A DNA stretch of 64,000 nucleotides from the NCBI RefSeq assembly GCF_030144855.1, contig NC_082729.1:35030001-35094000 (forward strand), read 5' to 3'. A program made the position numbers and the translations under genes. A model generated the notes under the pieces. The model was not told the DNA's origin. It worked only from the letters and a program-made list of their open reading frames with translations, and made no database searches. Source of the DNA: Hypanus sabinus. Its lineage: Eukaryota. Numbering within the stretch: position 1 is the stretch's first letter; every line of letters begins with the position of its first letter. Below, piece after piece: positions 3,791 through 64,000 of this stretch.

Positions 3791-4701
3791 CTACTTCCGA
3801 GACGAAGCTAACGAATGTGAAATGTTCAGCGGAAATTTCATCAGAACCTTTAACTCTTCTCGGAATTTGTTTTGAGTCACTGCGTAGATAAACGTGTTTG
3901 TGCAACAGCTCAGCATCTGAAACACGTTTCCACTTTCCATCAGGATAAATCTGGGGTCTCCGTAGCCATTAACTGTATAACCAACTTGAAATCGCTCTAC
4001 AAAGAAGTGTATAACATACGGCATCCACAGAAGGATGAAACATCCCGAGATTGCAAAGAGCAGGACGATCGACTTCCTGCGGCTTTCCATCTCCGGGTCG
4101 CTCTGTCTCTCTCCGGCGGAACAACTGCGGAGTCTCCTACGGGCCCGACTGGCCGCCAAAATGTGCCTGACCGTCAGAGCGTTGAATGAGAGAATAAGCA
4201 GGAACGGTACGCAAGGAGTCACAACGCGATCGGTCCAATCAAATATTGTCCACACCAGAAAATAATAAAGAATACTCCTCCGTTTGCAATACCAGGGCAC
4301 GTTGTCAATGACGTAGACTGGTTCGTGCAAAAAATACCAGGGAATGTTAATCACGCAACCCAGAGTGCAGACGACACAGACAACAATTCCTGCGGTTCTT
4401 TGCGTGCAGTATTTTGCTTTGAGATTCTGCCAGCAGATGGCGACGTATCGATCAAAGGTGAATGTGACCGTTAACCAAACCGAACTGTCCCTAGCGGCGT
4501 AAATTAACGCAATGCTCAAACTGCACACAGGCGTGATGGAAAGGAAACTGCCGGGGAAATAAATAGCAGGAATGCGGTTTAATATCACAGCGGTGATAAT
4601 TACCAGAAGATCCGTCGCGGCCATGGACACGAGATACCGGCTGATACACCTGGACAAACCGCAGTTTCCTCGGGAGAGGATCACAATAGCCACTATATTA
4701 A
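3791..4701 (-). CDS. GPR139/GPR142-like class A GPCR, copy 1, coding exon 2 (rest of TM1 to C-terminus)
   Basis: Acceptor ttgtttctcccgcag|TT AAT ATA GTG. The open frame has TM2 MAATDLL, TM3 Cys and FTFDRY, TM4 NIPWY, TM5 TPCVPF..N, TM6 WMP, TM7 SCCTNTFIY and a TAG stop at 3791. It splices in phase 1 to exon 1, giving 326 aa. AATAAA on - strand at 3733-3738. Confidence 0.93.
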
Positions 4702-6440: not shown

Positions 6441-7621
6441 TACCATTGCAAACAACTAACGAAGGAACAGATTTGGTAACATCCTCATTAGTGTGACCTC
6501 GTAAATTGGGAAATTGCTGCAATGCTTCTCACTTCCTGATGAGATGGTGGTTGTTGTGGGGAAATGCATTGTGTACACATTCAAAGCTCAATATGTAACA
6601 TTTCAAAAATTGCTTTTCGCTTTACCGACCCTATCATGCCGAACACTCCGATCTGACGTTATGTAATTTGATTATTTCAAATTATATGTATAAAATATAT
6701 ATTATGCAGACATTTTATACAAATACTGTATACATTGAATCTGCTCTACCGTTCCATAATGGCTGGTTTATTATCGCTTTCCCCCACTCCTCTTTTACTT
6801 TTTCCCTGTAATCGTTGACTCCCTTCTTAATCAAGATCCTATCAATCTCCTCTTAACATGCACCCTATGACTTGTCCTCCACAGCCGTCTGGGGCTTAAT
6901 TCCACAGATTGACCTCCTTCTTATCAAATATATATTCCTCATCTCTGCTATAAATGAACATCCTTCAATTCTAATGTTGTACCCGCTTATCCTGGACTCA
7001 ACATCTGCAGGAAACATCTTCTATATTTCTACTCAATGCAGGCCTTTCAATATTTCAATACGTTTCATTGAAATCATTCTCCCGCGCCATTCATGAAACC
7101 TCCAGAGAACATAGGCCCAGAGCCATCAGGCTCTACACATACCTTAACACTTTGTGGCCAGAGACCGTTGTGGAGCCAAGCGATTGGCTATCTTTAAGGC
7201 AGAGTTTGATAGGTTCTTGATCAAACAGTGTATCAAAGATTATGGGCACACGGCAGGGGAATGGAGTTGGGATAACAAATGGCGGAGAAACTATGGACCG
7301 AATGGCCTAATTCTTTTCAGCAGCCTTATGTTCTCATGGTTTTCATGCATTAGACTGAAACAGATGAAAGCAAAAATTCGCCCTTAGGCACCCTCAGCTT
7401 ATCTGTTCATGCGGATTTCAGAAAGCTGAGACACATGGGAAAGATTAAAGAGAGTGTCCAATGGTAGGTTAAAAATGCCGCTTCAACCTTTGGCGCAGTC
7501 AATAAGAGTATCATGAAAGTCAGATACATCAGGAGAGGTACACAACTGATCCATCATAATATCTACTGATTAATTGTGGAAAATGAGATATAAAATAGCA
7601 ACATCATGCATCTCGCATCTG

Positions 7622-9231
7622 CATTGGTGCTAGAAAGTTTTTGAACCTTGTAGAATTTTCTCCATGTTTGCATAAATCTGCCCTAAGCGTGCTCAGATCA
7701 TCACATAAGTCCTAAAACTAGATAAAAGAACCTAAGTAAATCATTGGCACAAAAACTTGATACTTGTCCATTTATTTATTGAGAACAATGATCCAATATT
7801 ACTTGTATTTGTTGAAAAATGTGTATGAATCTCCGGGTTAATGACTTCCAGAAAGGATAATTAGAGTCACATGTTCCAACCAATGGAGGTGTGAGCTGTA
7901 GAGGTGCCCTGCCCTATTTCAAAAAGAGACCGAGAAAATCAGGTTATTGGCAGATCCTACTCTTCTCATTAAAAATCTGTTTCTGTGCACCATTCCTGAA
8001 AGAAATCAGCTATCAAAGGACCGTAGAAGAAGAATTGTAGAGATACATTAAGCTGAAAAAGGCTGCAAAAACATTTCTAAAGGGCTGAAGGTTCATCAGC
8101 CCCTTGTAAGATGAATTGCCTACAATTGGAGAGAACTCAAAACTGCTGCTACTCTCCCTAGGGGCGAGTATGCCTCAAAGGTCACATCAACAGCACAATG
8201 TGCAAAGTTGAAGGAGACGAAAAAGGATCCAAGGGTAACAGCAACAGTTCTGCAGGTATCTCTATAACTTGCTAAAGTGTCTGTTCATGTATGTGTCCAC
8301 TATTAGAAAAACATTGAGCAAGAAAATTGCGCATGGAAGGACACCACAGTGGAAATCACTGCTCAAAGACAACATTATTGCACGTGTCAATTTTTTTAAA
8401 GACCTTCTGTATACTCTACAATGCTTCTGGCACTTCCTTCTGTGGACAGATGAGACAAAACTGAAACTTCTGACAGAAATATGCATTGCTATGTTTGTAG
8501 GATAAAGAGCACTGCACAGCAACACGAAAACCTCATCCCAACTGTGAAGCATGGTTGAAGGAGCGTCGTGGTTTTGGGTCGCTTTGCTGCCACAAGGCCG
8601 AGAAAACTTGGAATCGTTCAGAAAAGAATTGATTCAAAATTGTATCAGAACATTTTACAGGTGAATTTCAGGGTAGCAGGCCGATAACTGAAACTTAATA
8701 GAAGTTGGTTAATGCAACAAAATAATGATCCGAATGCAAGAGTAAATGAACAACAGAATGCTTTAAAAAGAAGAAAATTCGTCTTTTGGAATGGCCGAGT
8801 CAAAGTGCAGAGCTTAACCCTTTAGAAACGATGTGGAAGTACCTGAAGCCAGCATTATCCCAAAGCTCACACAGTTTTGCCAGGAGGAATAGCCTAAAAA
8901 CCTCCAAGCCCATGTGCAAGACTTGTTACTGGAAACATTTGGTTGAAGTTATTGTTGTATTAGGATGTGACAGCAGTCAATGAAAGCAAAGATTCACAAT
9001 TTTGTTCCTGAGGAATACACGTCATATTAGATAATTTTTCTCGAAATACATGTTATATTAGATAATTTTTCTCAATAAATAAATGATCGAGTATGATGTT
9101 TTTCCGTGATTTATTTAATTGGTTTCCTTTATCTAGATTTAGGACACGTGAAGATCTGTTCAAATTTTAGGTCGTGTTTGTGGAGAAATGGAAAAAATCC
9201 AATAGGGATCACAAACTGTCCAGTATTACTG
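7622..9231 (+). mobile_element. Tc1/mariner DNA transposon, full-length but degenerate
   Basis: ~200-bp terminal inverted repeats (cattggtgctagaaag... / ...cagtattactg followed by TA). Broken transposase with STIRKTL..HGRTP, LWTDETK and [13 protein letters not shown] motifs. Confidence 0.88.
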
Positions 9232-10394
9232 TAATCACCACACACTTAGATAACAGCAATATACTCATAGAAGATGGAAAATAGTACCGTGAAGGATGAA
9301 AGGGTGTGAAAAACAACTGAGGTTAGATCAAGCCTGGTACAAAAGCATTTTTCATTTTTGTAAAAATATTACCAATGTTACAAAAAATCGTTTTATTATG
9401 CCCCATAGTCATAGTTGATAGAGCCTCTTTATAAATATAAACTGTACCTAATACTTCTGAAATTCTTTCAACATCTGGTGAAACTTTGGCGTAATGTATG
9501 TGCTCTATCTTTTAACAACCACTGTTATCAAAATAAACCGATCCATTTTCAAGGGAGGTTCTTTAAGCCCTTATCTTCCTTTCAACTTGCTCTTTAATAA
9601 ACTGATCGGTCAAAAATTTTGTATCAAATCAGAAATAAAACTGAATTATTTTACCTCGAATCGCCTTCTGTACATGGATAAAACTGTGCGCACCCTCATC
9701 AGTAAAGCTACAGGAATTAATTCAAATGGCAGACCTTACTACTAAATAAGTGCAGAACATTAAAAACAAAGAAAGATGCAACAGAGCTAATAGAATACAA
9801 AACAGGGCAGGAGAATACAATACAACACAAAGGCTAATATGAAGCATGTAAGTACTTGTGATATAAACATGCAAAGTAAATTGATTATAGTGTGATAAAG
9901 GGAAATTTTTGACAGAATTTACATCAAGCCTTCAGAAATTTTGTATAGCAGACTTCAAGAGTATAAATGAAACAAAGGCAATAAACGCTTTCCCTATTCC
10001 CATATTAACATATTCTTTTGTCATAATATCTTGGACTGAAACCGATCTGAAAAATTTACAAACGAAATAAAAACTGAAATATCAAATATCAGAAAACACA
10101 GTGTGCACTCGAATGCGCTTAGATTAACACTGTCTCAGACAGCAGGACTAATAAGGATAAAAGACATTCAAATCTACAGGACAGTTAGGTAAAATTTCTA
10201 AGGATCTATTTTTATCAACGAAAACATGATTCAGTACTCTACAGGAGCATATGAAATTCTGAGATGTACACACCACAAAACTTAAATGACAGCACAGCTC
10301 AGAAAAATGGATAAATTAACATTTTCGAAGAAAACGTTAAACGATAAGAACAGCATAACACTACATGGAAAATATCCCGACGATATGAGCAGAC

Positions 10395-23799: not shown

Positions 23800-24698
23800 T
23801 TAATGTCGTGGCGATTGTGATCCTGTCCAGAGGTAACTGCGGCCTGACAAGATGTATCAGCCGGTACCTCGTGTCCATGGCGGTGACGGATCTTCTGGTA
23901 ATTATCACTGCCGTGATATTAAACCGGATTCCAGCTATTTATTTCCCAGGTAGTTTCCTCTCCATCACACCCGTGTGCAGTTTCAGCATTGCAATAATTT
24001 ACGCCGCCAGGGACAGTTCGGTTTGGTTGACAGTCATGTTCACTTTTGACCGATATGTCGCCATCTGCTGGCAGAAACTCAAAGTAAAGTATTGCACCCA
24101 CAGAACCGCCGGCATTGTCGTCTCGGTCGTCTGTACTTTGGGCTGCGTGATCAATATTCCCTGGTATTTTATGAACGAACCAATCTATGTCATTGATAAC
24201 GTGCCCTGGTATTGCAAACAGAGGGATATCCGTTATACTTTTCTGTTGTGGACTATATTTGATTGGGCCGATCGCGTTGTGACACCTTGCCTCCCGTTCC
24301 TGCTTATTATCTCGTTCAACACTCTGACTGTCAGTCACATTTTGGTGGCCAATCGTGCCCGTAGAAGACTCCAAAGTTGCCCCACGGGAGAGAGACAGAG
24401 CGACCCGGAGATGGAAAGCCGCAGGAAGTCGATCGTCCTGCTCTTTGCAATCTCGGGATGTTTCATCCTTCTGTGGATGCCATATGTTGTCTACTTCTTT
24501 GTTCATCGATTTCAAGTTGGTGATGCAATTATTGGTTACAGCGATCCCAGATATATCCTGATGGAAATTGCCAATGTGCTTCAAATGTTGAGTTGTTGCA
24601 CAAACACGTTTATTTACGCAGTGACTCAAAATAAGTTCAGGAAGGAGCTGAAGAACCTGATATATCCACGGAACATTTCACATTCGTTGTCTAAGTAG
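23800..24698 (+). CDS. GPR139/GPR142-like class A GPCR, copy 2, coding exon 2
   Basis: Acceptor ttgtttctcccacag|TT AAT GTC GTG. Intact 7TM frame with DRY, WMP and NTFIY, TAG at 24698. Spliced product is 322 aa. Confidence 0.93.
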
Positions 24699-25520: not shown

Positions 25521-26867
25521 TGAACCGCCTATTGCTGTTCGAACCCAATAAAGTATCTCACGCAAGTGTTTACAGTTGATGGATAGCGAAACACAGCATC
25601 CACACACTAAATGTAATTGGACAATGATCACATGACGTTTGCAGGATTCAAATTTGTGCATGAGTATTGTGTAGGTAATTAAATATCACAAGGCTTTTCT
25701 TCTGAAAGTCGCATAGTTTTTTTTTTATGATTGGGTTTTCTTTAACATTCGCATATATCCCCTAAACTTCCACCTCAACTCTGCAGTGCTTGGTATTTGT
25801 GCTCTGGGAAAAATATAACTCTTACTATTTCCAACATCTTCGCTTTTCCTATAACCTTCTATCAGATCTCCCCACAGCCTCCGACGCTCCGGTGTAAACA
25901 ACCAACATTTGTCCAATTTCTCCTTATATCTCAAACCCACCAACCCGAGCAGCATCCTGGTGAAATTCCTTTGAAACCACTCTCATCTCCTTTAAACCGT
26001 TTGTCCTCTCATATCTAATGCTCCAGTGTGACAATTCCAACCTGCGAAAAAGATCCTGAGCTTCTACCCAAGCTAAGCATATGGTAGGTAATCTAAAGAG
26101 AGACCAAGCAGCCACGATTTTCTGCAATAATTTTATGTACAGTCCTCTGCAAACGTCTTCGGCACATACATGTTGCTCGGGTCTTTAATACTTCTGCACA
26201 ATAGTGTGTTTGGCGATTTGGATCAGACAGCGAATTTGTAAACCTGATAGGAGCAAAGGATTCTGCGTTTAGCCAGAGCGGTGCACCGCGGGAGGAGTGT
26301 GAGACAGGTAGCAAAGAAGGAGTACCGAGGGTGGGGGGAGGTTGTGGCGGGTTCAGACTGACCCATCCCGCAGACACCAGACAACCTCTGTAAAAATATG
26401 CCCAACTTTTTGCATACAATCGATTGCTATTTTATTTATTAACTCCTGTTCATTTTTTTTTTGCTGCTGTGGCCAATAAACATCAAGGTTTGAAGTGGTG
26501 TGAGCTCAAGAATGCTCTTCTGCACACCATTGTTGTAACGAGTGGTTACTTGAGTTACTTTTGCCTTCTTGCCAGCTTAAAATAGTCTGACCGTTCCCGT
26601 TTACCCTCTCTCATTAATTGAGCATTGTCACACTTGATCCACAGCTGACTGGATTGCTTAGCAGCAATCGCCTTGACTCTGGGGACTATTGTGAGTGAAA
26701 ATCTCAGGAAGTCATCTCGGTTTAAATGTTCCCTGATAATTGCTTCTCCAGCCTTTTCTGCTCTGCATTACCGACCTCATTGGTGCTGCTTCATTCACTC
26801 ATGCGGAGCTCGTCAGTTTCATCAAATATACTTCCAATGCCCACCCTGCATTAAAGTGACGGCCTGT

Positions 26868-27082
26868 NNNNNNNNNNNNNNNNNNNNNNNNNNNNNNNNN
26901 NNNNNNNNNNNNNNNNNNNNNNNNNNNNNNNNNNNNNNNNNNNNNNNNNNNNNNNNNNNNNNNNNNNNNNNNNNNNNNNNNNNNNNNNNNNNNNNNNNNN
27001 NNNNNNNNNNNNNNNNNNNNNNNNNNNNNNNNNNNNNNNNNNNNNNNNNNNNNNNNNNNNNNNNNNNNNNNNNNNNNNNNNN
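26868..27082. other. Assembly gap (N run)
   Basis: 215 N bases. Confidence 1.
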
Positions 27083-27249
27083 ATTTCGCTGTACTCCTGC
27101 CATCCTATCACCTGCAAGCATGCCATTCCCTTTGCTGACTTGCACTCCCTACTCCTCTTCCCCCATGTTGGTTGATGAACGTCTCTGCAGTCAAGAAAAA
27201 GGCACTCTGAGGTTGGAAAAGAAATACTCCATGTTCCGCCTGGGTAGCT

Positions 27250-27665
27250 TAACGTTGTTATAGACGGGGTGGTGATGGGGACAAGCTCCCACTATCTATT
27301 AAATGCTCCTAATGGTGTGCGCCTCATTTCGCCTCGGATAGCCAAGTCCAGCTCCTGGCCTTCACGAGTGACTCAGCTATTAAGCCCAGTCGAACCATCT
27401 CTACTGACAGGAAAAGGTACAAAGGCGTGTTACTGGCACCTTAACACCAGTCGCTTAAGGCAGATGGGACTTATAGTTGACAGCTCATTTAGAGGAAGTA
27501 AACTCTGATCACAAGTCTCGGCTGCCTGGTGGCGATACTCACTTATGTGAAAGGCTTTGGGAGTAAACCCCGAGGAAAAATCCGGAGCCGGTCCCAAAAG
27601 TTATAGCAGGCGCACATTTTGTTGACTGCTGTCTCGCAGCTTCTGCGACGCTGCTGGTACCGAAC
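27250..27665 (+). mobile_element. RTE-type 5' region
   Basis: Same family as 40480-41060. Occupies the paralogous position to 39400-39640 in the copy-3 block. Confidence 0.55.
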
Positions 27666-34817: not shown

Positions 34818-35735
34818 TTAATATGGTGGCCATTGTGATCCTGTCCCTAGGAAACTGTGGCCTAAACAGATGTATCAGCCGATATCTTGTGTCCATGGCA
34901 GCGACAGATCTTCTGGTAATTATCACCGCTGTGATATTAAACCGGATTCCCGCTATTTATTTTCCCGGTAGTTTCCTATCCATCACCCCCGTGCGCAGTC
35001 TCAGCACTGTGTTAATTTACGCCGCCAGGGACAGTTCGGTTTGGTTAAAGGTCACGTTCACCCTTGACCGATATGTCGCCATCTGCTGGCACACACTCAA
35101 AGCAAAGTATTGCACCCACAGAACCGCTGGCATTGTTGTCTCTGTCGTCTGTACTTTGGGCTGCGTGATCAACATTCCCTGGTACTTTTTGCACGAACCA
35201 ATGTACGTCATTGACAACATGCCCTGGTTTTGCAAACGGCGGGATATCCTTTATTCTTTTCTGCTGTGGAAAGCATTTGATTGGACCGATCGCGTTTTGA
35301 CACCTTGCCTCCCGTTCCTGCTTATTATCTCCTTCAACGCTCTGACTGTTCGGCACATTCTGGCGGCCAGTCGGGCCCCTAGGAGACTCCGCAGTTATCC
35401 CACGGAAGTGAAACAGAGCGACCCGGAGATGGAAAGCCGCAGAAGGTCGATCGTCCTGCTCTTTGCAATCTCGGGATGTTTCATCATTCTGTGGATGCTG
35501 TATGTTCTCCATTTCTTGCTGAAGCGATTTCAAGCTGGTTACACAATTAATGGCTCCAATGATTACAGGTTAATCCTAAGGGAAATTGCCAACGTGTTTC
35601 AGATGCTGGGCAAATACGTGTTTCAGATGCTGCACAAATACGTTTGTCTACGCAGTGACTCAGAACAAATTGTTGAAAGAGTTGAAAGTCCTGATGAAAT
35701 TTACATGGAACATTTCACATTCGTTTTCTAAATAG
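34818..35735 (+). pseudogene. GPR139/GPR142-like GPCR copy 3, exon 2, frameshifted in TM7 (probable pseudogene; ORF still open to 35731)
   Basis: Acceptor tctcttacag|TT AAT ATG. A 16-nt insertion (35612-35627) shifts the frame before CCTNTFVY, and the ancestral frame continues to TAG 35733-35735. Also TM3 Cys->Arg (PVC->PVR), WLTV->WLKV and TM6 WMP->WML. Confidence 0.82.
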
Positions 35736-47999: not shown

Positions 48000-49720
48000 C
48001 ACAACACCACAAATCTTGATATCACCTGCATACGTACTAACCTACCCATCCGCGTTTTCATCCGGGTCATTTATGAACATCACAAATATTCTTGTAGAGT
48101 TACTGAAGAATCCGCTAATCACAGACCCCCAGCTACAATAGGTCACTTCGACTACTACCGTCTGTCTGCTCTAGGGAAACCAATTCTGAATCCAAACGTC
48201 AAACCCACCATCGATCCCATGTCTCTGAACTTTTCTGGACAAACCTCTCATGAGAAACCTTCTCAAACACCTTAATAAAATCCATTTAGACAACATCCAA
48301 GCTCCACCTTCATCGATCGCTATTGTCAACTCATCGAAAAGCTTACTCAATTTAGTAAGTCTTGTCACATACAAAACCATGCTGGCTGTCCATAATTAGG
48401 CTATTGTTTTGCAAATGTTCATAAATCCCAACCCTAAGAATTCCTTTGAATAACTGCCCAACCACTGACGTGAGACTCACTGGTCTATAGTTTCAGGTAT
48501 ATTCCCTGGTTCTTGTTTTGAATAATGGAACACTTTAGCTACTTGCCAGTCCTCCAATACTTCGCCTGTGATTAGAGAGGACACGAAAATAATGGTCAAG
48601 AACCTTGTAATCTCTTAAAGTACATCCCTCAATAACTTCGGGTGCATCGCGTCAGGGCCTGAGGACTTATCCACCTTGATGGTATTTAAGAGACCCAAGA
48701 CTACGCCCACCTTTGTCAGCAATTCGCTACCGTATCAATACGCAGACCTTACCATATCGATCCATTTCGTCGTTCTCCTTGGTAAATACTAATGAAAAGT
48801 ACAATTTAGGACATCACCCAAATTCACAGCATTCAAGCAAAGGGATCCTCCCCCTTCATCCTTGTGGTCCTAACGTTCTCCTAGTTCTACTCTTGGTCTT
48901 GATGTATACATAGAATACCTTGGGATTCTCAGTAATCGTACTCCCCAAGGCCTTTTCGTGATCCTTCCAGGCTTTCCCAATACCTTTCTTGAGTTCCTTT
49001 CTGTTTCCTAATAAGTCCTCCATGTTTCTGTGTTATTCAAGTTTCCTTAGCTTTACACGCGTTCCCTTTATCTTCTTGACTACATTCATCACCTTTGTCG
49101 ACTAACCAAGGTTCTCTTACCTTGCCATCCTTGTCTTTCCTTCTGACTGGGACATACCTGTCCCGTACTGCCTGCCGCTGATCTTTAACCACCCTCTACA
49201 TGTCAGATGTAGACCTGTCCAAAGCAGCTCATACCAAATAATCCTCCCTGGTTCCTGCCTACTGATCTTCTATTTTATGCCGCTCCAGTGTAAATCTCTC
49301 ACGGAACGTCAGAGTTGTTCATAAAACTTAAGGAGTTCTGTCGCTGTTCCCTAGCTGTTCATACACTGAAAGGTGGATCACTTCACCATACCCATTAGCC
49401 AACTCCTGGACATCCGCTCCTCATGTTGGATAAAGAGGGATGATTTCTTTGCCGCAATGCGCTGGGTGTGGGTGAGGACCTAAATAAGTCTACTTATCGA
49501 TTTTAAAAAATACCTCTGAATGCTCCTGACATATTCAGTCCTATCGATAACTCTTGCATACGAAAGTCCTATTTAAATAAAGGAAAATGAAGATCCCCGA
49601 AGGCAAAAATCCTATTGTTCTACATTTCCTTAATTTGTCTCCGTATATATTCCTCAATGTCTCAAAAACTGGTGATGTCTTGGGATATTGATGTATAACA
49701 GTCTCCAGAGTTTACAGTGT
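48000..49720 (-). mobile_element. CR1 LINE ORF2 fragments
   Basis: Minus-strand remnants of [19 protein letters not shown] and HGI.G....WIQNW. Confidence 0.75.
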
Positions 49721-49790
49721 TCTGTGGGCCAAAACGCCTTTTTAATGAAAGAGGTCAGATTGGATAGAGGTGACAGGAAGGAGGCAATCA

Positions 49791-50810
49791 TTATCCGTCC
49801 CACTGTGAATCTATGGCACGCCCCCCTACACTTTCCGGCAATCTGCCAACTACGGACAGGGACGCCCTACCTTCTGTTTGCTGGGAGGTGTCCCACCTGC
49901 AGGAGAATCTGCTCACTCTATCACGAAGTTTGCACACTCCACAGATAATTATGACGGGATTCAAGACCGCATAGGAGAAAGAGTCATACAGGTAAGTGAA
50001 GTCAAACAATTCCTCCAGCATAACGGAGCAGAGCAAAGTCTGAGAAATAACGCAGAAGAGAAATATTATTCTTGCAAGAAGAATAAAAAGAAATGACAGA
50101 TAAAGGCAAAACACCATAGCTATTATGCGCATGTAGTGGCTCTTTTGATGTTTAACCTTGGGAGTAAGTTTCAAAGAGGAACGACTGTTCCGCCAGAGCG
50201 CTGAGATTAGGCAAACACAGGACGTGGACATCCAGACGGTGGGGACCGCGTTTCCCAAGATTAGATTCATGTACATATCCAGTTCTTCGATTGCATCGCG
50301 ATTTCCTGACTGGGAGAGGTTCATTGAGTCGATATCAAAGGAGCCGTTTTGATATTGGCAGGTTATGGCTACATTGGTAAGGTAACAGTCCAGAGTTCCG
50401 AGGGCGCAGCTGAGCAAAACTGTCGCGGTGACCCAAAGGCTAGCCTTCCTGCTGATGACTTGGGCTAGTTTATTGGCGAAGGGTCGATAGACACTGACCA
50501 CTTTCACACAGTAGAAGAAGCAGAGCAAGGCACTAACCCAGAAGCTCAGGGAATGACAGAGTGTCAGGAAGGACTCGGCGACCTTTTTCTGGAGATCGCA
50601 GAAGATGTGAACGAAATCCACGGCCATCCGGATCACCGCAGCTGCGATGGTGACGATGTTGGCGAGGGCCAGACCACATACAATAATTTCGGCAGGAGGC
50701 GTACCGCTCTGACCCGATCCCGGAAGCATAGTGAGCAGGATGAAGACGTTGGCCATTATTCCGAACACCCCGAAGAATCCGACGGCCAGGGCCTCGATCA
50801 ACCATTCCAT
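49791..50810 (-). CDS. Bitter taste receptor (T2R/TAS2R)-like 7TM receptor, single coding exon, 339 aa
   Basis: Very short N-terminus, TM1 GIMANVFI, TM3 SLSFWVSALLCFFYCVKVV (T2R S.W...L..FYC.KI signature), ECL2 N-glycan sites NGS and NLS, TM5-ICL3 LISALWRN...SH, TM7 IIICG..KLR. Uninterrupted ORF surrounded by TE debris. Confidence 0.8.
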   Translation of the reverse strand: MEWLIEALAVGFFGVFGIMANVFILLTMLPGSGQSGTPPAEIIVCGLALANIVTIAAAVIRMAVDFVHIFCDLQKKVAESFLTLCHSLSFWVSALLCFFYCVKVVSVYRPFANKLAQVISRKASLWVTATVLLSCALGTLDCYLTNVAITCQYQNGSFDIDSMNLSQSGNRDAIEELDMYMNLILGNAVPTVWMSTSCVCLISALWRNSRSSLKLTPKVKHQKSHYMRIIAMVFCLYLSFLFILLARIIFLFCVISQTLLCSVMLEELFDFTYLYDSFSYAVLNPVIIICGVCKLRDRVSRFSCRWDTSQQTEGRASLSVVGRLPESVGGRAIDSQWDG

Positions 50811-50850
50811 TCTGCTGTCGGAAGGTGCGAAAGAGAATAAAATGTGTTAG
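50811..50850 (-). promoter_or_regulatory. Splice acceptor immediately upstream of the T2R ATG
   Basis: Minus strand reads CTAAC (branch point), then ttttattctctttcgcaccttcc, then gaCAGCAGa-ATG. Confidence 0.55.
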
Positions 50851-51734
50851 AATCAGGTTTATTATCACTGGCTGTTCCGCGACAACAATACTTTTATATA
50901 CATAATAATACAAATACTTTAAATTGTAATGAGACATATATTTTAAAAACTTAACTTTAGTCAGTATTGCTAAAAGATGACAAACATATTGGTGGAGACC
51001 ATAACTCATAGGAGCATAAATAGGCCAATTAGCGCATAGAGTCTGCTCCGCCATTCTATCTGGGCTGAGCAAGGATCCCACTGAACCCCGTACACCTGTC
51101 TTCTCGCTATATGCTTTGATGCCCTGAAGATTCAGGAAACTATCAACTTCCGACTTAAATATACCCAAGGCCTTAGCCTCCACTGCTGTCTGTGGCAGAG
51201 CACCACACGGATTAAATACTTTCTGACTAAAGCAAATCATGTTTGTTCTAAAAGGTCGCCACTCAATTTTGAGACTGTGCCCCCGAGTTCTGGATAATCC
51301 CACTGGAGGAAGCATGAGAGCCATGAGAATACATGTTCATTCTATGCAAAACTCTGATAGCCGAGGGGACGAAGTCGTGTCTAAATTGTAGCGTGTGTGT
51401 CCTCAGTCTCTTGCACCTCCTCCCTGATGATAGGAATGAGGGGAGGACATGTCCTGGGTGATAGGTGATCTTAAATGATGGTTTCCGCCATCGCGAGGTA
51501 TCGCCTTTGGACGATGTCATTTTAAAGATGCCAACACGTGGTAGAGGGGTTGCCTCAGTTATTGGGGTCTGGATCACAAGAACACATCTGTTGTCCCAAC
51601 TGGAAGATGCCTATCCAACCCAGTCCCATCACCCCGCGGTGAACACATACTCTACCCAATCTTATAATGTCATATTCACACACTCTGTAAAACCGCTTCG
51701 GGCAAAATCTGTCCAGGCTGAGCAAAATGTAGTT

Positions 51735-54049: not shown

Positions 54050-56040
54050 CTCATTTAATAACAATATGCCTATTGCTCGCCTTTGTGCGTAACACAGCCT
54101 CGTAAACAAGATGAAGACAGGGAAGGTGATAAATTGTGGGAGGACCGTGGGCTATCAAATATCTGTCAAATAAATGGTGTCCTCGTTTTATTTCACCTGT
54201 CGGTTACTAACGTGTAAAGCAAATTATACCTATGTACTTTCAGGAAGTACTGGATCTAAGGATTTAATGAATCTATAATTTCGTAAATAAAGATTCACCA
54301 TTCGGCCTTGGGATCTCAGTAAGCTTTCAATAATCTATCTTTGTTTCAAGGTTGAATAACAGCCTCTCTCTCTGTGGGAAGACAAGACAGGTTGTCGCTG
54401 GCATCTTAGTAGGATGCGATAAAGTTTGAAGAACTGATCTTCTTTTTTGAAGCTTTGGCTGATATAATTGATTTTCTGTGCGCATATATTAAAAATGCCA
54501 TGACCATTGTTTTGAAAGACCTGGCGATCGCACTATTAGCAATCTATCCTCCCCATATTCATGAGTGAAGATATCTCCAGTCACTTTGAAGTCTGGGTCC
54601 ATTTTATCGGTGACCAACTTTAATTGAAATTCCTTAGCAAATTAATTTTCCTAACACTGGTAAAAAAAAAACTCTTACGAAAAGAGCAATGAAGAAGCCT
54701 TCTACATCAGTATGCAATAACAACCCGGGACTTGCAGACTGACAGAAAAACGAAGGAAAACATTGACACGATGAAGGAAACCGTGAACGCCGCCAGAGAT
54801 GGAGGACTTTCACTGCTGCCCAAAAGGCCAGTGGCGTAGCTGGCAAAAGAAGAAAAAGGAAGACTATGTCCTGCCGACAACATCCTGTGGCTCTCTTCAG
54901 CCATTCTGAACTGGTCACCTTTAAATCAATCGTTAGCGTGACGCTATTGCAGATTTCGGAGTCGGTGTTCAATTTGGGTTCCGCTGCAAGGAGTTCGTAC
55001 ACTCTTCTGTGGACTGCAGGAGTTTCCTGCGGGTGCCTCAGTTTCCAAAAATATATCATATGTTAGGTAGATTGACCAGTGTAAATTGTCCTGTAATTCA
55101 ATAAGTGGATTGCTCGTGGCTCAATTTGATGGGCCGGAAATAGATGTTCCACATAGTAACTCAGAATGACCCAAGGGGCTCGTGTCGTCAAATTATGCCC
55201 GTCTTTCATATTAACCCGAACTTCTTTGGAATGTGGGAGAAACCGGAGCACCCGGAGGAATCCACGCTGTCAGTAGAACATCTTACAGATCGTGGTGGGA
55301 ATTGAACATGCATCGCTGGCATTGTGCAGCGTTACTGTGCCAATAGAAAACACATCGCAGAAAGTTTTATTGGTGAATAATACAGAATGAAAATTTGTTT
55401 AAGCTGCTAAAACTTTCATTAATATTGATCAGCATTTTTGCTCCCATTTCTGGCAACAATTTCTGCTCAATGGAAGTTGTTCTTCACCATAGCTCAGTTT
55501 TCTCATTGGATTAATATAAGCATTCCAATATTTCATCATAACAAACCAGAACTTTAAACAGAGAAAATTAAAACTGAATGGTGTACCTCAGTACGTATAT
55601 CCCCGACTGTAATTTTGGATTCCTTGCTTTGTGCAGTCAATGGTGAACTTGTTCTTCAGAGTCAGACAATATTATGCCACATCGGCATCATTTATACCAT
55701 CGGTTTCCAGTGTATTCAATACAATTAGTAAGGAAATCTATAATTTGAATATAGCTGGTCAGGCTGTTTTGAACAGATTCAAATTACAATTGGAATTGAC
55801 CCTTGCAAGATATTTACATTACTGATCCGTCGTGTTTACTGAACCTGGCATATTTCGTCATCCCTGCAATGTTGGTCGAGAGGCATTTGCCGCATAATAA
55901 TTTCCAGATCAAATGTGCCAGAACAGGAAGGATTTGTGACCTTGTCACCTTAAATCAACCACTCACTTCACATCTGTGAAGACCATTACAGAAATTATCA
56001 TCAGTTAGTAAATTGCAATTTCCCTTAGATATGAAAACTT
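54050..56040 (-). pseudogene. Fossil NACHT-like NTPase coding remnants (possibly two tandem domains), split by SINEs
   Basis: Manual translation with stops and frameshifts. Distal block: GDIFTH..DRLLIVRSPG(fs)KT (~54505-54545, Walker A-like), ERLLFNLE..D (~54335-54366, Walker B-like), VLPES (~54236-54250). Proximal block: NILQG, LYSNYRF, KVLVCYDE (~55530-55555), QKLLPE (~55448-55465). Confidence 0.4.
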
Positions 56041-62759: not shown

Positions 62760-64000
62760 AGGTATTAAAGGCAGATAAATCGCCAGGGCTTGATGGTCTG
62801 CATCCCAGAGTGCTTAAGGAAGAAGCCCAAGAAATGGTGGATGCTTTAGGGATAATTTTTCAAAACTCCTCAGATTCTGGATTAGTTCCTGAGGATTGGA
62901 GGTTGGCTAATGTAACCCCACTTATTAAAAAAGGAGGCAGAGAGAAACCGGGGAATTATAGACTGGTTAGTCTGACATCGGTGGTGGGGAAAATGCTAGA
63001 GTCGGTTATCAAAGATGTGATAACAGCACATTTGGAAAGAGATGAAATCATCGGACAAAGTCAGCATGGATTTGTGAAAGGAAAATCATGTCTGAGGGAT
63101 CTTATAGAATTTTTTGAAGATGTAACTAGTAGAATGAGTAGGGGAGAACCAGTGGATGTGGTATATTTAGATTTTCAAAAGGTTTTTGACAAGGTCCCAC
63201 ACAGGAGATTATTGTGCAAACTTAATGCACACGGTATTGGGGGTATGGTATTGATGTGGATAGAGAATTGGTTGGAAGACAGGAAGCAAAGAGTGGGAGT
63301 AAACGGGACCTTTTCAGAATGGCAGGCAGTGACTAGTGGGGTACCGCAAGGCTCAGTGCTGGGACCCCAGTTGTTTACAATATATATTAATGATTTAGAC
63401 GAGGGAATTAAATGCAGCATCTCCAAGATTGCGGATGACACGAAGCTGGGCGGCAGTGTTAACTGTGCGGAGGATGCTAAGAGGATGCATGGTGACTTGG
63501 ATAGGTTAGGTGAGTGGGCAAATTCATAGCAGATGAAATTTAATGTGGATAAATGTGAGGTTATTCACTTTGGTTGCAAAAAACAAGAAAACAGATTATT
63601 ATCTGAATGGTGGCCGATTAGGAAAGGGGGAGATGCAATGAGACTTGGGTGTCATTGTACACCAGTCATTGAAGGTGGGCATGCAGGTACAGCAGGCGGT
63701 GAAAAAAGCAAATGGTATGTTAGCATTCATAGCAAAGGGATTTGAGTACAGGAGCAGGGAGGTTCTACTGCAGTTGTACAAGGGCTTGGTGATACCGCAC
63801 CTAGAATATTGTGTGCAGTTTTGGTCCCCTAATCTGAGGAAAGACATTCTTGCCATAGAGGCAGTACAGAGAAAGTTCACCAGATTGATTCCTGGAATGG
63901 CAGGACTTTCATATGAAGAAAGACTGGATCGACTAGGCTTATACTCACTGGAATTTAGAAGATTGAGGGGGGATCTTATTGAAACGTATAAAAATCTAAA
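62760..64000 (+). mobile_element. CR1 LINE reverse transcriptase region, relatively young but disrupted
   Basis: ORF 62810-63529 has [36 protein letters not shown] and IADDTKL. An in-frame TAG and a frameshift follow, and the element runs off the window end. Confidence 0.93.

What the first reader, a model, noticed from the sequence alone, without database searches (positions are those of the whole stretch)
49791..50810. Intact T2R-like receptor with mixed T2R, V1R and class A motifs
Seen: TM3 is typical T2R (SFWVSALLCFFYCVKV). TM2 reads LALAN (V1R/ORA-like, not the mammalian T2R LxxSR), and TM7 reads YAVLNPVII (class A NP-like, not T2R HSxxLI). Known: cartilaginous fish were long thought to lack T2Rs and carry very few. 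Inference: this is either that early-branching T2R or a separate lineage near the T2R/V1R split.
Basis: partly seen in the sequence, partly recalled or inferred. Interest (0 to 1): 0.7.

Follow-up and report, generated by a model that had tools for sequence, protein, structure and literature searches.

The report
Known stingray bitter taste receptor gene
This is an intact, evolutionarily constrained copy of the single bitter-taste receptor gene (T2R1) that sharks and rays are already known to carry, and whose stingray and sawfish versions have already been cloned and tested, so it is real but ordinary.

Summary
The ORF is real: 339 codons, minus strand, 49791-50810, uninterrupted, with all three quoted motifs.

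It is a T2R. Pfam TAS2R scores 42 bits (cutoff 22.2) with no V1R or class A hit. Profile-profile probability is 99.7% against bony-vertebrate T2Rs and 0.4% against class A. All 30 top Swiss-Prot fold matches are T2Rs.

Its only close relative in two very large protein databases is the smalltooth sawfish T2R (70% identity); the next hits are at most 29%. That sawfish gene is the published cartilaginous-fish T2R1.

The 'mixed' motifs are shared with the sawfish receptor and sit at standard T2R positions. LALAN aligns with coelacanth/lungfish LALSN/LAVSN. FYCVK is the T2R F3.49-Y3.50-x-x-K3.53 motif. NPVII occupies H7.49-S/P7.50-x-x-L7.53. Only N7.49 is unusual.

dN/dS against sawfish is 0.22 (p about 3e-22). 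Contigs of four related organisms show no stop or frameshift over the parts they cover.

Neighbouring genes place the window in a myliobatiform (stingray-type) ray. A review table lists red stingray and sawfish T2R agonists from Itoigawa et al. 2024.

A first-stage note on this same window (s1-207062) had already flagged this receptor.

The parts
49791..50810 (-). Single-exon coding sequence of the T2R1 orthologue (339 aa including a roughly 30-aa poorly conserved C-terminal tail; stop codon 49791-49793)
   Evidence: ORF list and sequence. Pfam TAS2R 42 bits. 70% identity over 98% to Pristis pectinata XP_051864870.1. dN/dS 0.22. AF2 model with 7 TM helices plus helix 8.
50658..50672 (-). TM2 motif LALAN (residues 47-51)
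   Evidence: Identical in sawfish T2R1. Aligns with LALSN / LAVSN / LAFSN of coelacanth and lungfish T2Rs and LALSR of a caecilian T2R.
50499..50546 (-). TM3 block SFWVSALLCFFYCVKV (residues 89-104), containing F99-Y100-x-x-K103, the T2R F3.49-Y3.50-x-x-K3.53 activation motif that stands in place of class A DRY
   Evidence: W91, L96, C97, Y100 and C101 are invariant across 10 T2Rs. Motif definition from review PMC11641376.
49923..49973 (-). TM7 / helix 8 junction YAVLNPVIIICGVCKLR (residues 280-296). N284-P285-x-x-I288 sits at the T2R H7.49-S/P7.50-x-x-L7.53 position and is followed by the T2R-typical G-x-x-K-L-R.
   Evidence: Aligns with YSSGSPVILVIGTVKLR (coelacanth) and YPSLHSIVLIQGNTKLR (caecilian) in A1. 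Identical in sawfish T2R1 apart from one I/V change. Motif definition.
50340..50348 (-). N-G-S sequon (residues 155-157) in extracellular loop 2, conserved with sawfish
   Evidence: N155, G156 and S157 are invariant in A2. The loop position comes from the AF2 model, which is low-confidence at residues 154-171. That ECL2 glycosylation matters for T2R function is my own background knowledge, not tested here.
55655..55994 (-). 345-bp block conserved with the sawfish locus (75% identity), upstream of the T2R and in the same orientation in both species; possible conserved non-coding element, function unknown
   Evidence: blastn L001:21-363 against window 55994-55655, one copy in the window. Stops in all frames. 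It lies inside a region that another first-stage note flagged as a possible fossil gene, so it is only weak synteny evidence.

Best explanation
The ORF is the orthologue, in a myliobatiform (stingray-type) ray, of the single bitter taste receptor T2R1 of elasmobranchs. It encodes a class T seven-transmembrane GPCR with an almost absent N-terminus. By inference from its tested orthologues, it is displayed on taste-bud cells and binds bitter xenobiotics such as chloroquine, denatonium and ofloxacin. Bile-acid and steroid agonists are known only for the shark receptors. It would signal through a gustducin-type G protein using the T2R F-Y-x-x-K (TM3) and TM7 microswitches. Shown here: the gene is intact, belongs to the T2R family, is closest to sawfish T2R1, and is under purifying selection. 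Inferred only: ligands, G-protein coupling and tissue of expression.
For: Intact 339-codon ORF. Pfam TAS2R 42 bits against a cutoff of 22.2, near full-length, with no V1R or 7tm_1 hit at E<=10. The only close homologue among 5.8 and 1.8 billion proteins is Pristis pectinata 'taste receptor type 2 member 143' XP_051864870.1, at 70% identity and 98% coverage. All remaining hits are bony-vertebrate T2Rs at 21-32% local identity (at most 29% for the full-length matches). That sawfish gene (CM019896.1:3658922-3659917) is the one catalogued as the cartilaginous-fish T2R by Policarpo et al. 2024. Behrens et al. 2023 (PMC10691231) report an intact T2R1 in one sawfish and place the elasmobranch T2R1 clade sister to all bony T2Rs, with ORAs as outgroup. 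hhalign of the elasmobranch pair against bony T2Rs gives 99.7%, E 8e-26, 284 columns; against class A GPR139-like receptors it gives 0.4%. In the ML tree, window plus sawfish is a 100/100 clade inside a 100/100 T2R group. The AF2 model has 7 TM helices plus H8. Foldseek Swiss-Prot top 30 are all T2Rs, and PDB ranks 1-4 are TAS2R46/TAS2R14. dN/dS against sawfish is 0.22, Fisher p 3e-22, with identity 74% in helices and 57% outside them. Contigs of four related organisms show no indel or stop in the parts of the CDS they cover (two of them leave gaps), with dN/dS 0.41-0.51. Lineage: the neighbouring GPR139-like ORF is 84-86% identical to Mobula, Hemitrygon and Hypanus proteins and about 70% or less to sharks, skates and electric ray. 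Function of orthologues: red stingray T2R responds to chloroquine, denatonium benzoate and ofloxacin, and sawfish T2R to chloroquine and denatonium (Itoigawa et al. 2024, as tabulated in PMC11641376 Table S1). Shark T2R1 also responds to taurolithocholic acid, and catshark T2R1 to progesterone.
Against: No expression evidence: no RNA run holds the sequence. My tree has no V1R/ORA sequences and does not itself resolve the 'sister to all bony T2Rs' position. Genome-wide copy number was not checked. Synteny with sawfish rests on a single 345-bp block. A profile of the two elasmobranch sequences alone does not reach human TAS2R structures by sequence, which shows how divergent the clade is. Among close relatives the excess of synonymous change is only marginal (12 syn to 20 non, p 0.048).
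Confidence: 0.94

Rival explanations
1. It is a separate receptor lineage near the T2R/V1R split, or a V1R/ORA-type olfactory receptor, rather than a true T2R.
For: N-P at TM7 positions 7.49-7.50 and N instead of R at the end of the TM2 motif differ from mammalian T2R consensus. The elasmobranch-only profile does not reach human TAS2Rs in the PDB by sequence.
Against: There is no Pfam V1R hit at E<=10, while TAS2R scores 42 bits. All sequence hits are T2Rs and none is V1R/ORA. hhalign against bony T2Rs is 99.7%. All 30 top Swiss-Prot fold matches are T2Rs. The same motifs occur in sawfish T2R1, which published trees with ORA outgroups place inside T2R at maximal support. The TM2 and TM7 residues are in register with coelacanth and lungfish T2R residues.
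Confidence: 0.01
2. It is a lineage-specific duplicate (paralogue) of T2R1 rather than the one-to-one orthologue, possibly with a shifted function.
For: The genome was not searched for further copies. Identity to sawfish is only 70%. The gene sits beside a birth-and-death array of GPR139-like receptors, a duplication-prone neighbourhood.
Against: Published surveys found no duplication of this gene in any cartilaginous fish. There is only one copy in the 64-kb window. dS of 0.77 against sawfish fits old species divergence. One collinear conserved block lies upstream in both species. No other taste-receptor note exists for this genome in the scan's index, which is weak evidence.
Confidence: 0.03
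3. The ORF is intact, but the gene is silent or on its way to pseudogenisation, as reported for the two skates.
For: No RNA evidence. dN/dS among close relatives is 0.41-0.51 and only marginally below neutral. Behrens et al. found pseudogenes in two skates, which are also batoids.
Against: The frame shows no stop or indel in this genome or in the CDS parts covered by contigs of four related organisms. There is strong long-term constraint, concentrated in the helices. All invariant T2R residues are retained. The red stingray orthologue is functional in cell assays. T2R transcripts are rare and confined to taste tissue, so missing RNA says little.
Confidence: 0.04

Closest known systems
Red stingray (Hemitrygon akajei) T2R, Itoigawa et al. 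2024, Curr Biol 34:R271 (seen only through PMC11641376 Table S1)
   Same: It comes from the same order-level lineage (Myliobatiformes) as judged from the neighbouring genes, and it is the single elasmobranch T2R. It is expected to be the nearest orthologue. It has been deorphanised with chloroquine, denatonium benzoate and ofloxacin.
   Different: The species of the window was not determined here.
Smalltooth sawfish (Pristis pectinata) T2R1, XP_051864870.1
   Same: 70% amino-acid and 77% nucleotide identity over the full length. Same start codon, single exon, the same TM2/TM3/TM7 motifs and the same ECL2 N-G-S sequon. It responds to chloroquine and denatonium.
   Different: The window protein is 7 residues longer. 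The C-terminal tail, the ICL1 region (residues 30-37) and the ECL2 centre diverge. Flanking DNA is not alignable except for one 345-bp block.
Shark T2R1 (Scyliorhinus canicula, Chiloscyllium plagiosum), Behrens et al. 2023
   Same: Same orthogroup by the published tree, which includes the sawfish gene. Single copy, conserved, and expressed in catshark taste tissue.
   Different: No shark sequence was available in my tools for direct comparison. The shark receptors respond to more agonists (amarogentin, colchicine, bile acid) than are tabulated for the ray receptors.
Bony-vertebrate T2Rs (coelacanth, lungfish, bowfin, amphibian; human TAS2R46/14/4 structures)
   Same: Same family and fold. Shared features include N1.50, the TM2 L-A-x-S/A-N motif, TM3 W..LC.FYC.K, the TM5 proline and TM7 G-x-x-K-L-R.
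   Different: Only 18-26% identity. The elasmobranch receptor has N rather than H or S at 7.49 and about 8 extra residues before TM7. It also has a longer tail.
V1R/ORA receptors (sister family of T2Rs)
   Same: Both are short-N-terminus, intronless, rhodopsin-like 7TM chemoreceptors. They are the sister group of T2Rs according to Behrens et al..
   Different: No detectable Pfam V1R match. No V1R appears among the sequence hits or the top 30 fold hits.

Membership tests
TAS2R / class T GPCR | Scores above the curated Pfam TAS2R (PF05296) threshold over most of the model | tested here: met
   42 bits against a cutoff of 22.2; residues 15-300 on profile positions 18-296 of 303.
TAS2R / class T GPCR | Profile-level homology to accepted T2Rs and not to class A receptors | tested here: met
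   hhalign against 7 bony T2Rs: 99.7%, E 8e-26. Against GPR139-like class A: 0.4%.
TAS2R / class T GPCR | Seven TM helices with a very short N-terminus and no ectodomain; single coding exon | tested here: met
   In the AF2 model TM1 starts at residue 2, with 7 TM helices plus H8. The ORF is uninterrupted. The criterion comes from the review.
TAS2R / class T GPCR | F3.49-Y3.50-x-x-K3.53 in place of class A DRY | tested here: met
   F99-Y100-C-V-K103, aligned with FYCVK of bony T2Rs.
TAS2R / class T GPCR | H7.49-S/P7.50-x-x-L7.53 in place of class A NPxxY | tested here: inconclusive
   The sequence is N284-P285-V-I-I288. P7.50 is within the T2R range and 7.53 is aliphatic, not Y, but 7.49 is N, not H. 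The motif is identical in the sawfish receptor, which is functional, so this is not disqualifying.
TAS2R / class T GPCR | Predicted fold closest to T2R structures | tested here: met
   Swiss-Prot top 30 are all T2Rs (TM about 0.63-0.71). PDB ranks 1-4 are TAS2R46/14, though class A receptors score close behind. The model is only pLDDT 67.
TAS2R / class T GPCR | Falls inside the T2R clade and outside V1R/ORA in a phylogeny | tested here: inconclusive
   It lies inside a 100/100 T2R group relative to a class A outgroup. No V1R/ORA sequence was obtainable, so that half rests on the published placement of the sawfish orthologue.
TAS2R / class T GPCR | Activated by bitter compounds, with gustducin-type coupling | not testable with these tools
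   Known for the red stingray, sawfish and shark orthologues.
TAS2R / class T GPCR | Expressed in taste tissue | not testable with these tools
   No RNA run holds the sequence. Shown for catshark T2R1 only.
Elasmobranch T2R1 orthogroup | Nearest relative is another elasmobranch T2R1, with a large gap to all bony T2Rs | tested here: met
   70% to sawfish T2R1 against 21-32% local identity (at most 29% for full-length matches) to the next hits. The clade is 100/100 with a stem length of 2.29.
Elasmobranch T2R1 orthogroup | Single copy per genome | not tested
   Only one copy in the 64-kb window. The genome as a whole was not searchable.
Elasmobranch T2R1 orthogroup | Conserved genomic neighbourhood | tested here: inconclusive
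   One collinear 345-bp block lies upstream. No shared genes occur within +/-10 kb of the sawfish gene, and no GPR139-like gene is there.
Elasmobranch T2R1 orthogroup | Purifying selection on the coding sequence | tested here: met
   dN/dS 0.22 against sawfish, p 3e-22. The value is 0.41-0.51 against four close relatives, which is marginal at p 0.048.
V1R / ORA | Match to the Pfam V1R model or V1R-like top hits | tested here: not met
   No V1R family is listed at E<=10. There are none among the sequence or fold hits.
Class A (rhodopsin-like) GPCR | Pfam 7tm_1 match, plus DRY and NPxxY motifs | tested here: not met
   No 7tm_1 hit. The sequence has FYCVK instead of DRY, and NPVII lacks Y7.53. 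hhalign against class A is 0.4%.

The most novel reading that the evidence does not exclude
The N7.49-P7.50 pair in TM7, shared by the ray and sawfish T2R1, may be a retained class-A-like ancestral state of the T2R activation switch. Coelacanth and lungfish T2Rs have S/C-P at the same place. The histidine of tetrapod T2Rs would then have arisen later. If so, elasmobranch T2R1 would be a natural intermediate for studying how the class T activation mechanism evolved from the NPxxY mechanism. The main text of Behrens et al. 2023 does not mention motifs. I could not read Itoigawa et al. 2024 or the supplements, so this may already be noted.
Probability: 0.35. Interest if true: 0.3.

Novelty: already known. 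Interest (0 to 1): 0.1.

Why it matters
It matters little beyond annotation. The gene confirms that a stingray-type ray keeps an intact, constrained copy of the single elasmobranch bitter receptor. That fits the already published functional red stingray T2R. It also suggests that the pseudogenisation seen in two skates is specific to skates and not general to batoids.

There is a practical point. This gene is absent from the annotated protein sets of several rays and sharks in the databases I searched. One large TAS2R survey also filtered it out. Genome annotations should therefore not be read as evidence of loss.

Tried and rejected
- **Single-sequence phmmer against the PDB.** It gave only chance matches to NorM/MATE transporters at E 0.13, which I discarded.
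- **Profile of the two elasmobranch sequences against the PDB.** It reached no TAS2R structure. The 10-sequence profile did (E 1e-41), but that profile is dominated by bony T2Rs, so I do not count it as evidence for this gene.
- **RNA evidence.** Two run searches found no RNA holder. This says nothing about expression.
- **Itoigawa et al. 2024.** The paper is not held in the library. I used its data only as tabulated in the review's Table S1.
- **V1R/ORA outgroup.** I could not obtain any V1R/ORA sequence from the tools, so my tree uses class A outgroups only. It leaves the position of the elasmobranch clade among bony T2Rs unresolved (82/93, open fork). It neither confirms nor contradicts the published 'sister to all bony T2Rs' topology.
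- **P0002.** This 2075-aa hit with 22 matched stretches looks like a run-on prediction across tandem T2R genes, and I left it out. The partial hits P0004 and P0007 were also left out of the alignments. P0009 and P0012, whose source names I did not look up, were included in the tree.
- **A contig 'joint' skipping 49717-50849.** It has only 21 letters on one side. Both flanks carry short high-copy repeat fragments, so I treat it as a repeat artefact and not as a T2R-less allele.
- **The 263-aa ORF at 50533-51324.** It overlaps the start of the T2R out of frame and was not examined further. Nothing suggests it is a gene.
- **Synteny.** The downstream block L001:14225-14442 has two copies in the window, so it is a repeat and was not used.

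Full report
**Observation.** The three quoted strings are present:
- LALAN at residues 47-51;
- SFWVSALLCFFYCVKV at residues 89-104;
- YAVLNPVII at residues 280-288.

**Family.** Pfam places the protein in TAS2R (PF05296) at 42 bits against a gathering score of 22.2, covering profile positions 18-296 of 303. No V1R or rhodopsin-family (7tm_1) match appears even at E<=10.

An exhaustive HMMER search of 1.8 billion representative proteins returned 13 hits. One is close. It is Pristis pectinata 'taste receptor type 2 member 143', XP_051864870.1, at 70% identity over the full length and E 1e-151. Of the other twelve, nine were looked up and all are T2Rs of coelacanth, lungfish, bowfin and amphibians (21-29% identity). 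No V1R/ORA was among them. The word-indexed search of 5.8 billion proteins found the same single close hit.

A profile of the ray and sawfish pair aligns to a profile of seven bony-vertebrate T2Rs with 99.7% probability (E 8e-26, 284 columns). Against class A GPR139-like receptors the probability is 0.4%.

An AlphaFold2 model has seven TM helices starting at residue 2, plus helix 8. Its confidence is moderate (pLDDT 67, pTM 0.62). Its 30 best Swiss-Prot fold matches are all T2Rs. The four best PDB matches are TAS2R46 and TAS2R14, although class A receptors follow closely.

**Orthology.** The sawfish locus I fetched (CM019896.1, gene at 3658922-3659920) is the gene listed as the cartilaginous-fish T2R in Policarpo et al. 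2024, Supplementary Table 5. Behrens et al. 2023 (PMC10691231) report an intact T2R1 in one sawfish. That paper describes a single T2R1 in 12 of 17 cartilaginous fishes. The clade is sister to all bony T2Rs, with V1R/ORA as the next outgroup, both nodes at maximal support.

In my small ML tree the window gene and sawfish T2R1 form a 100/100 clade on a long stem, inside a 100/100 T2R group relative to class A. My tree has no ORA sequences and does not resolve where the elasmobranch clade sits among bony T2Rs. For that I rely on the published analyses.

Only one T2R-like sequence exists in the window. The DNA alignment with sawfish covers the CDS plus about 34 bp upstream and a few bases downstream. 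A single 345-bp non-coding block (window 55655-55994) is also conserved, collinear and upstream in both species. This is weak synteny support at best.

**The 'mixed' motifs.** All three motifs are also present in sawfish T2R1, so they are clade features, not peculiarities of this gene. Alignment with bony-vertebrate T2Rs shows the following.
- **TM2.** LALAN is in register with LALSN (coelacanth), LAVSN and LAFSN (lungfish), ISVSN (bowfin) and LALSR (caecilian). The terminal N is the common state in fish T2Rs, and the mammalian R is the derived comparison. A V1R explanation is not needed.
- **TM3.** FYCVK is the T2R F3.49-Y3.50-x-x-K3.53 motif, as defined in the review PMC11641376.
- **TM7.** N284-P285-V-I-I288 occupies H7.49-S/P7.50-x-x-L7.53 and is followed by the T2R-typical G-x-x-K-L-R. 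P7.50 is an accepted T2R state, and coelacanth and lungfish T2Rs have S-P or C-P there. There is no class A tyrosine at 7.53.

Only N7.49 is genuinely class-A-like.

**Constraint.** Against sawfish, dN is 0.17 and dS is 0.77, giving dN/dS of 0.22. By counts this is 110 synonymous and 118 non-synonymous differences on 235 and 782 sites, Fisher p 3e-22. Identity is 74% in the seven helices and 57% outside them.

Assembled contigs of four related, coded organisms lie on the gene at about 97-98% identity. None shows an insertion, deletion or stop in the parts of the CDS it covers, and two of the four leave gaps. The only indels lie downstream of the stop codon. The 32 listed substitutions split 12 synonymous to 20 non-synonymous. 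That gives dN/dS of 0.41-0.51 per organism and p 0.048 against neutrality. These short-range numbers are approximate, because five further differences were not listed.

**Lineage.** The neighbouring GPR139-like ORF (23808-24698) is 84-86% identical to proteins of Mobula hypostoma, Hemitrygon akajei and Hypanus sabinus. It is about 70% or less to sharks, skates and the electric ray. The window is therefore from a myliobatiform ray. Earlier notes of this scan call the genome a stingray, and one says Atlantic stingray. I confirmed the order-level placement only.

**What is already known.** Three groups have described this single elasmobranch T2R. The decisive item is Supplementary Table S1 of PMC11641376, which tabulates Itoigawa et al. 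2024:
- red stingray (Hemitrygon akajei) T2R responds to chloroquine, denatonium benzoate and ofloxacin;
- smalltooth sawfish T2R responds to chloroquine and denatonium benzoate;
- both were tested in HEK293T cells with G-alpha16gust44.

BitterDB 2024 also lists 'stingray' among its species. Behrens et al. additionally showed agonism by bile acid (both sharks) and progesterone (catshark), and taste-tissue expression for catshark T2R1.

That criterion is met.

**Mechanism.**
- Shown here: an intact, constrained class T GPCR gene orthologous to T2R1.
- Inferred from tested orthologues: it detects bitter xenobiotics on taste-bud cells and signals through a gustducin-type G protein. Endogenous steroid and bile-acid agonists are known only for the shark receptors.
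- Not testable here: expression, since no RNA run holds the sequence, and ligands.

**Residual interest.** First, the gene is missing from the annotated protein sets of rays and sharks in the databases searched, although the red stingray gene has been cloned. One large TAS2R survey also filtered out all cartilaginous-fish T2Rs. Absence from annotation is therefore not loss. Second, an intact and constrained copy in stingray-type rays suggests that the pseudogenisation reported for 'rays' by Behrens et al. concerns skates only. Third, N7.49-P7.50 may be an ancestral state of the T2R activation switch. I could not establish whether this has been noted before.

**Verdict.** This is a real feature that was correctly spotted. 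It is a plain orthologue of a described and functionally characterised gene, so interest is low.

Noticed in passing
window 3791-4693 (-), 23808-24698 (+), 34823-35731 (+): Three paralogous class A GPCR ORFs (Pfam 7tm_1, 62-81 bits), 79-84% identical to one another, annotated elsewhere as 'probable G-protein coupled receptor 139'. 1217 database proteins match at E<=1e-20, almost all from sharks and rays, so this is a very large elasmobranch expansion. All three ORFs are about 27 residues shorter at the N-terminus than the 323-326-aa annotated homologues. The third changes frame near 35611-35628, so some may be pseudogenes.
   Followed up: partly
window 55655-55994 and L001:21-363: A 345-bp block that is 75% identical between the ray and the sawfish, upstream of the T2R in the same orientation in both. 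It is single-copy in the window and has stops in every frame. It could be a conserved regulatory element or a decayed exon. It lies inside the region of first-stage note s1-207134 (possible fossil Ig/NACHT gene).
   Followed up: partly
window 62810-63529 (+), extending to about 63990: A reverse-transcriptase ORF (Pfam RVT_1, 94 bits). Similar retroelement pieces lie in the sawfish locus (L001 about 6800-9640) by tblastx.
   Followed up: partly
window 49694-49787 and 50822-50915: Contig depth in related organisms jumps 50-100-fold immediately outside both ends of the T2R coding sequence, for example at 49719-49759. Short fragments of genome-wide repeats therefore abut the gene on both sides.
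   Followed up: partly
window about 26870-27070 (inside ORF 26673-27263): Runs of N totalling 467 bases in the window (assembly gap or masked stretch).
   Followed up: no
protein databases: No T2R protein from Hypanus sabinus, Hemitrygon akajei, Mobula spp. or the sharks known to have T2R1 was retrievable, although their GPR139-like proteins were. Automatic annotation, or this database snapshot, often lacks this gene.
   Followed up: partly
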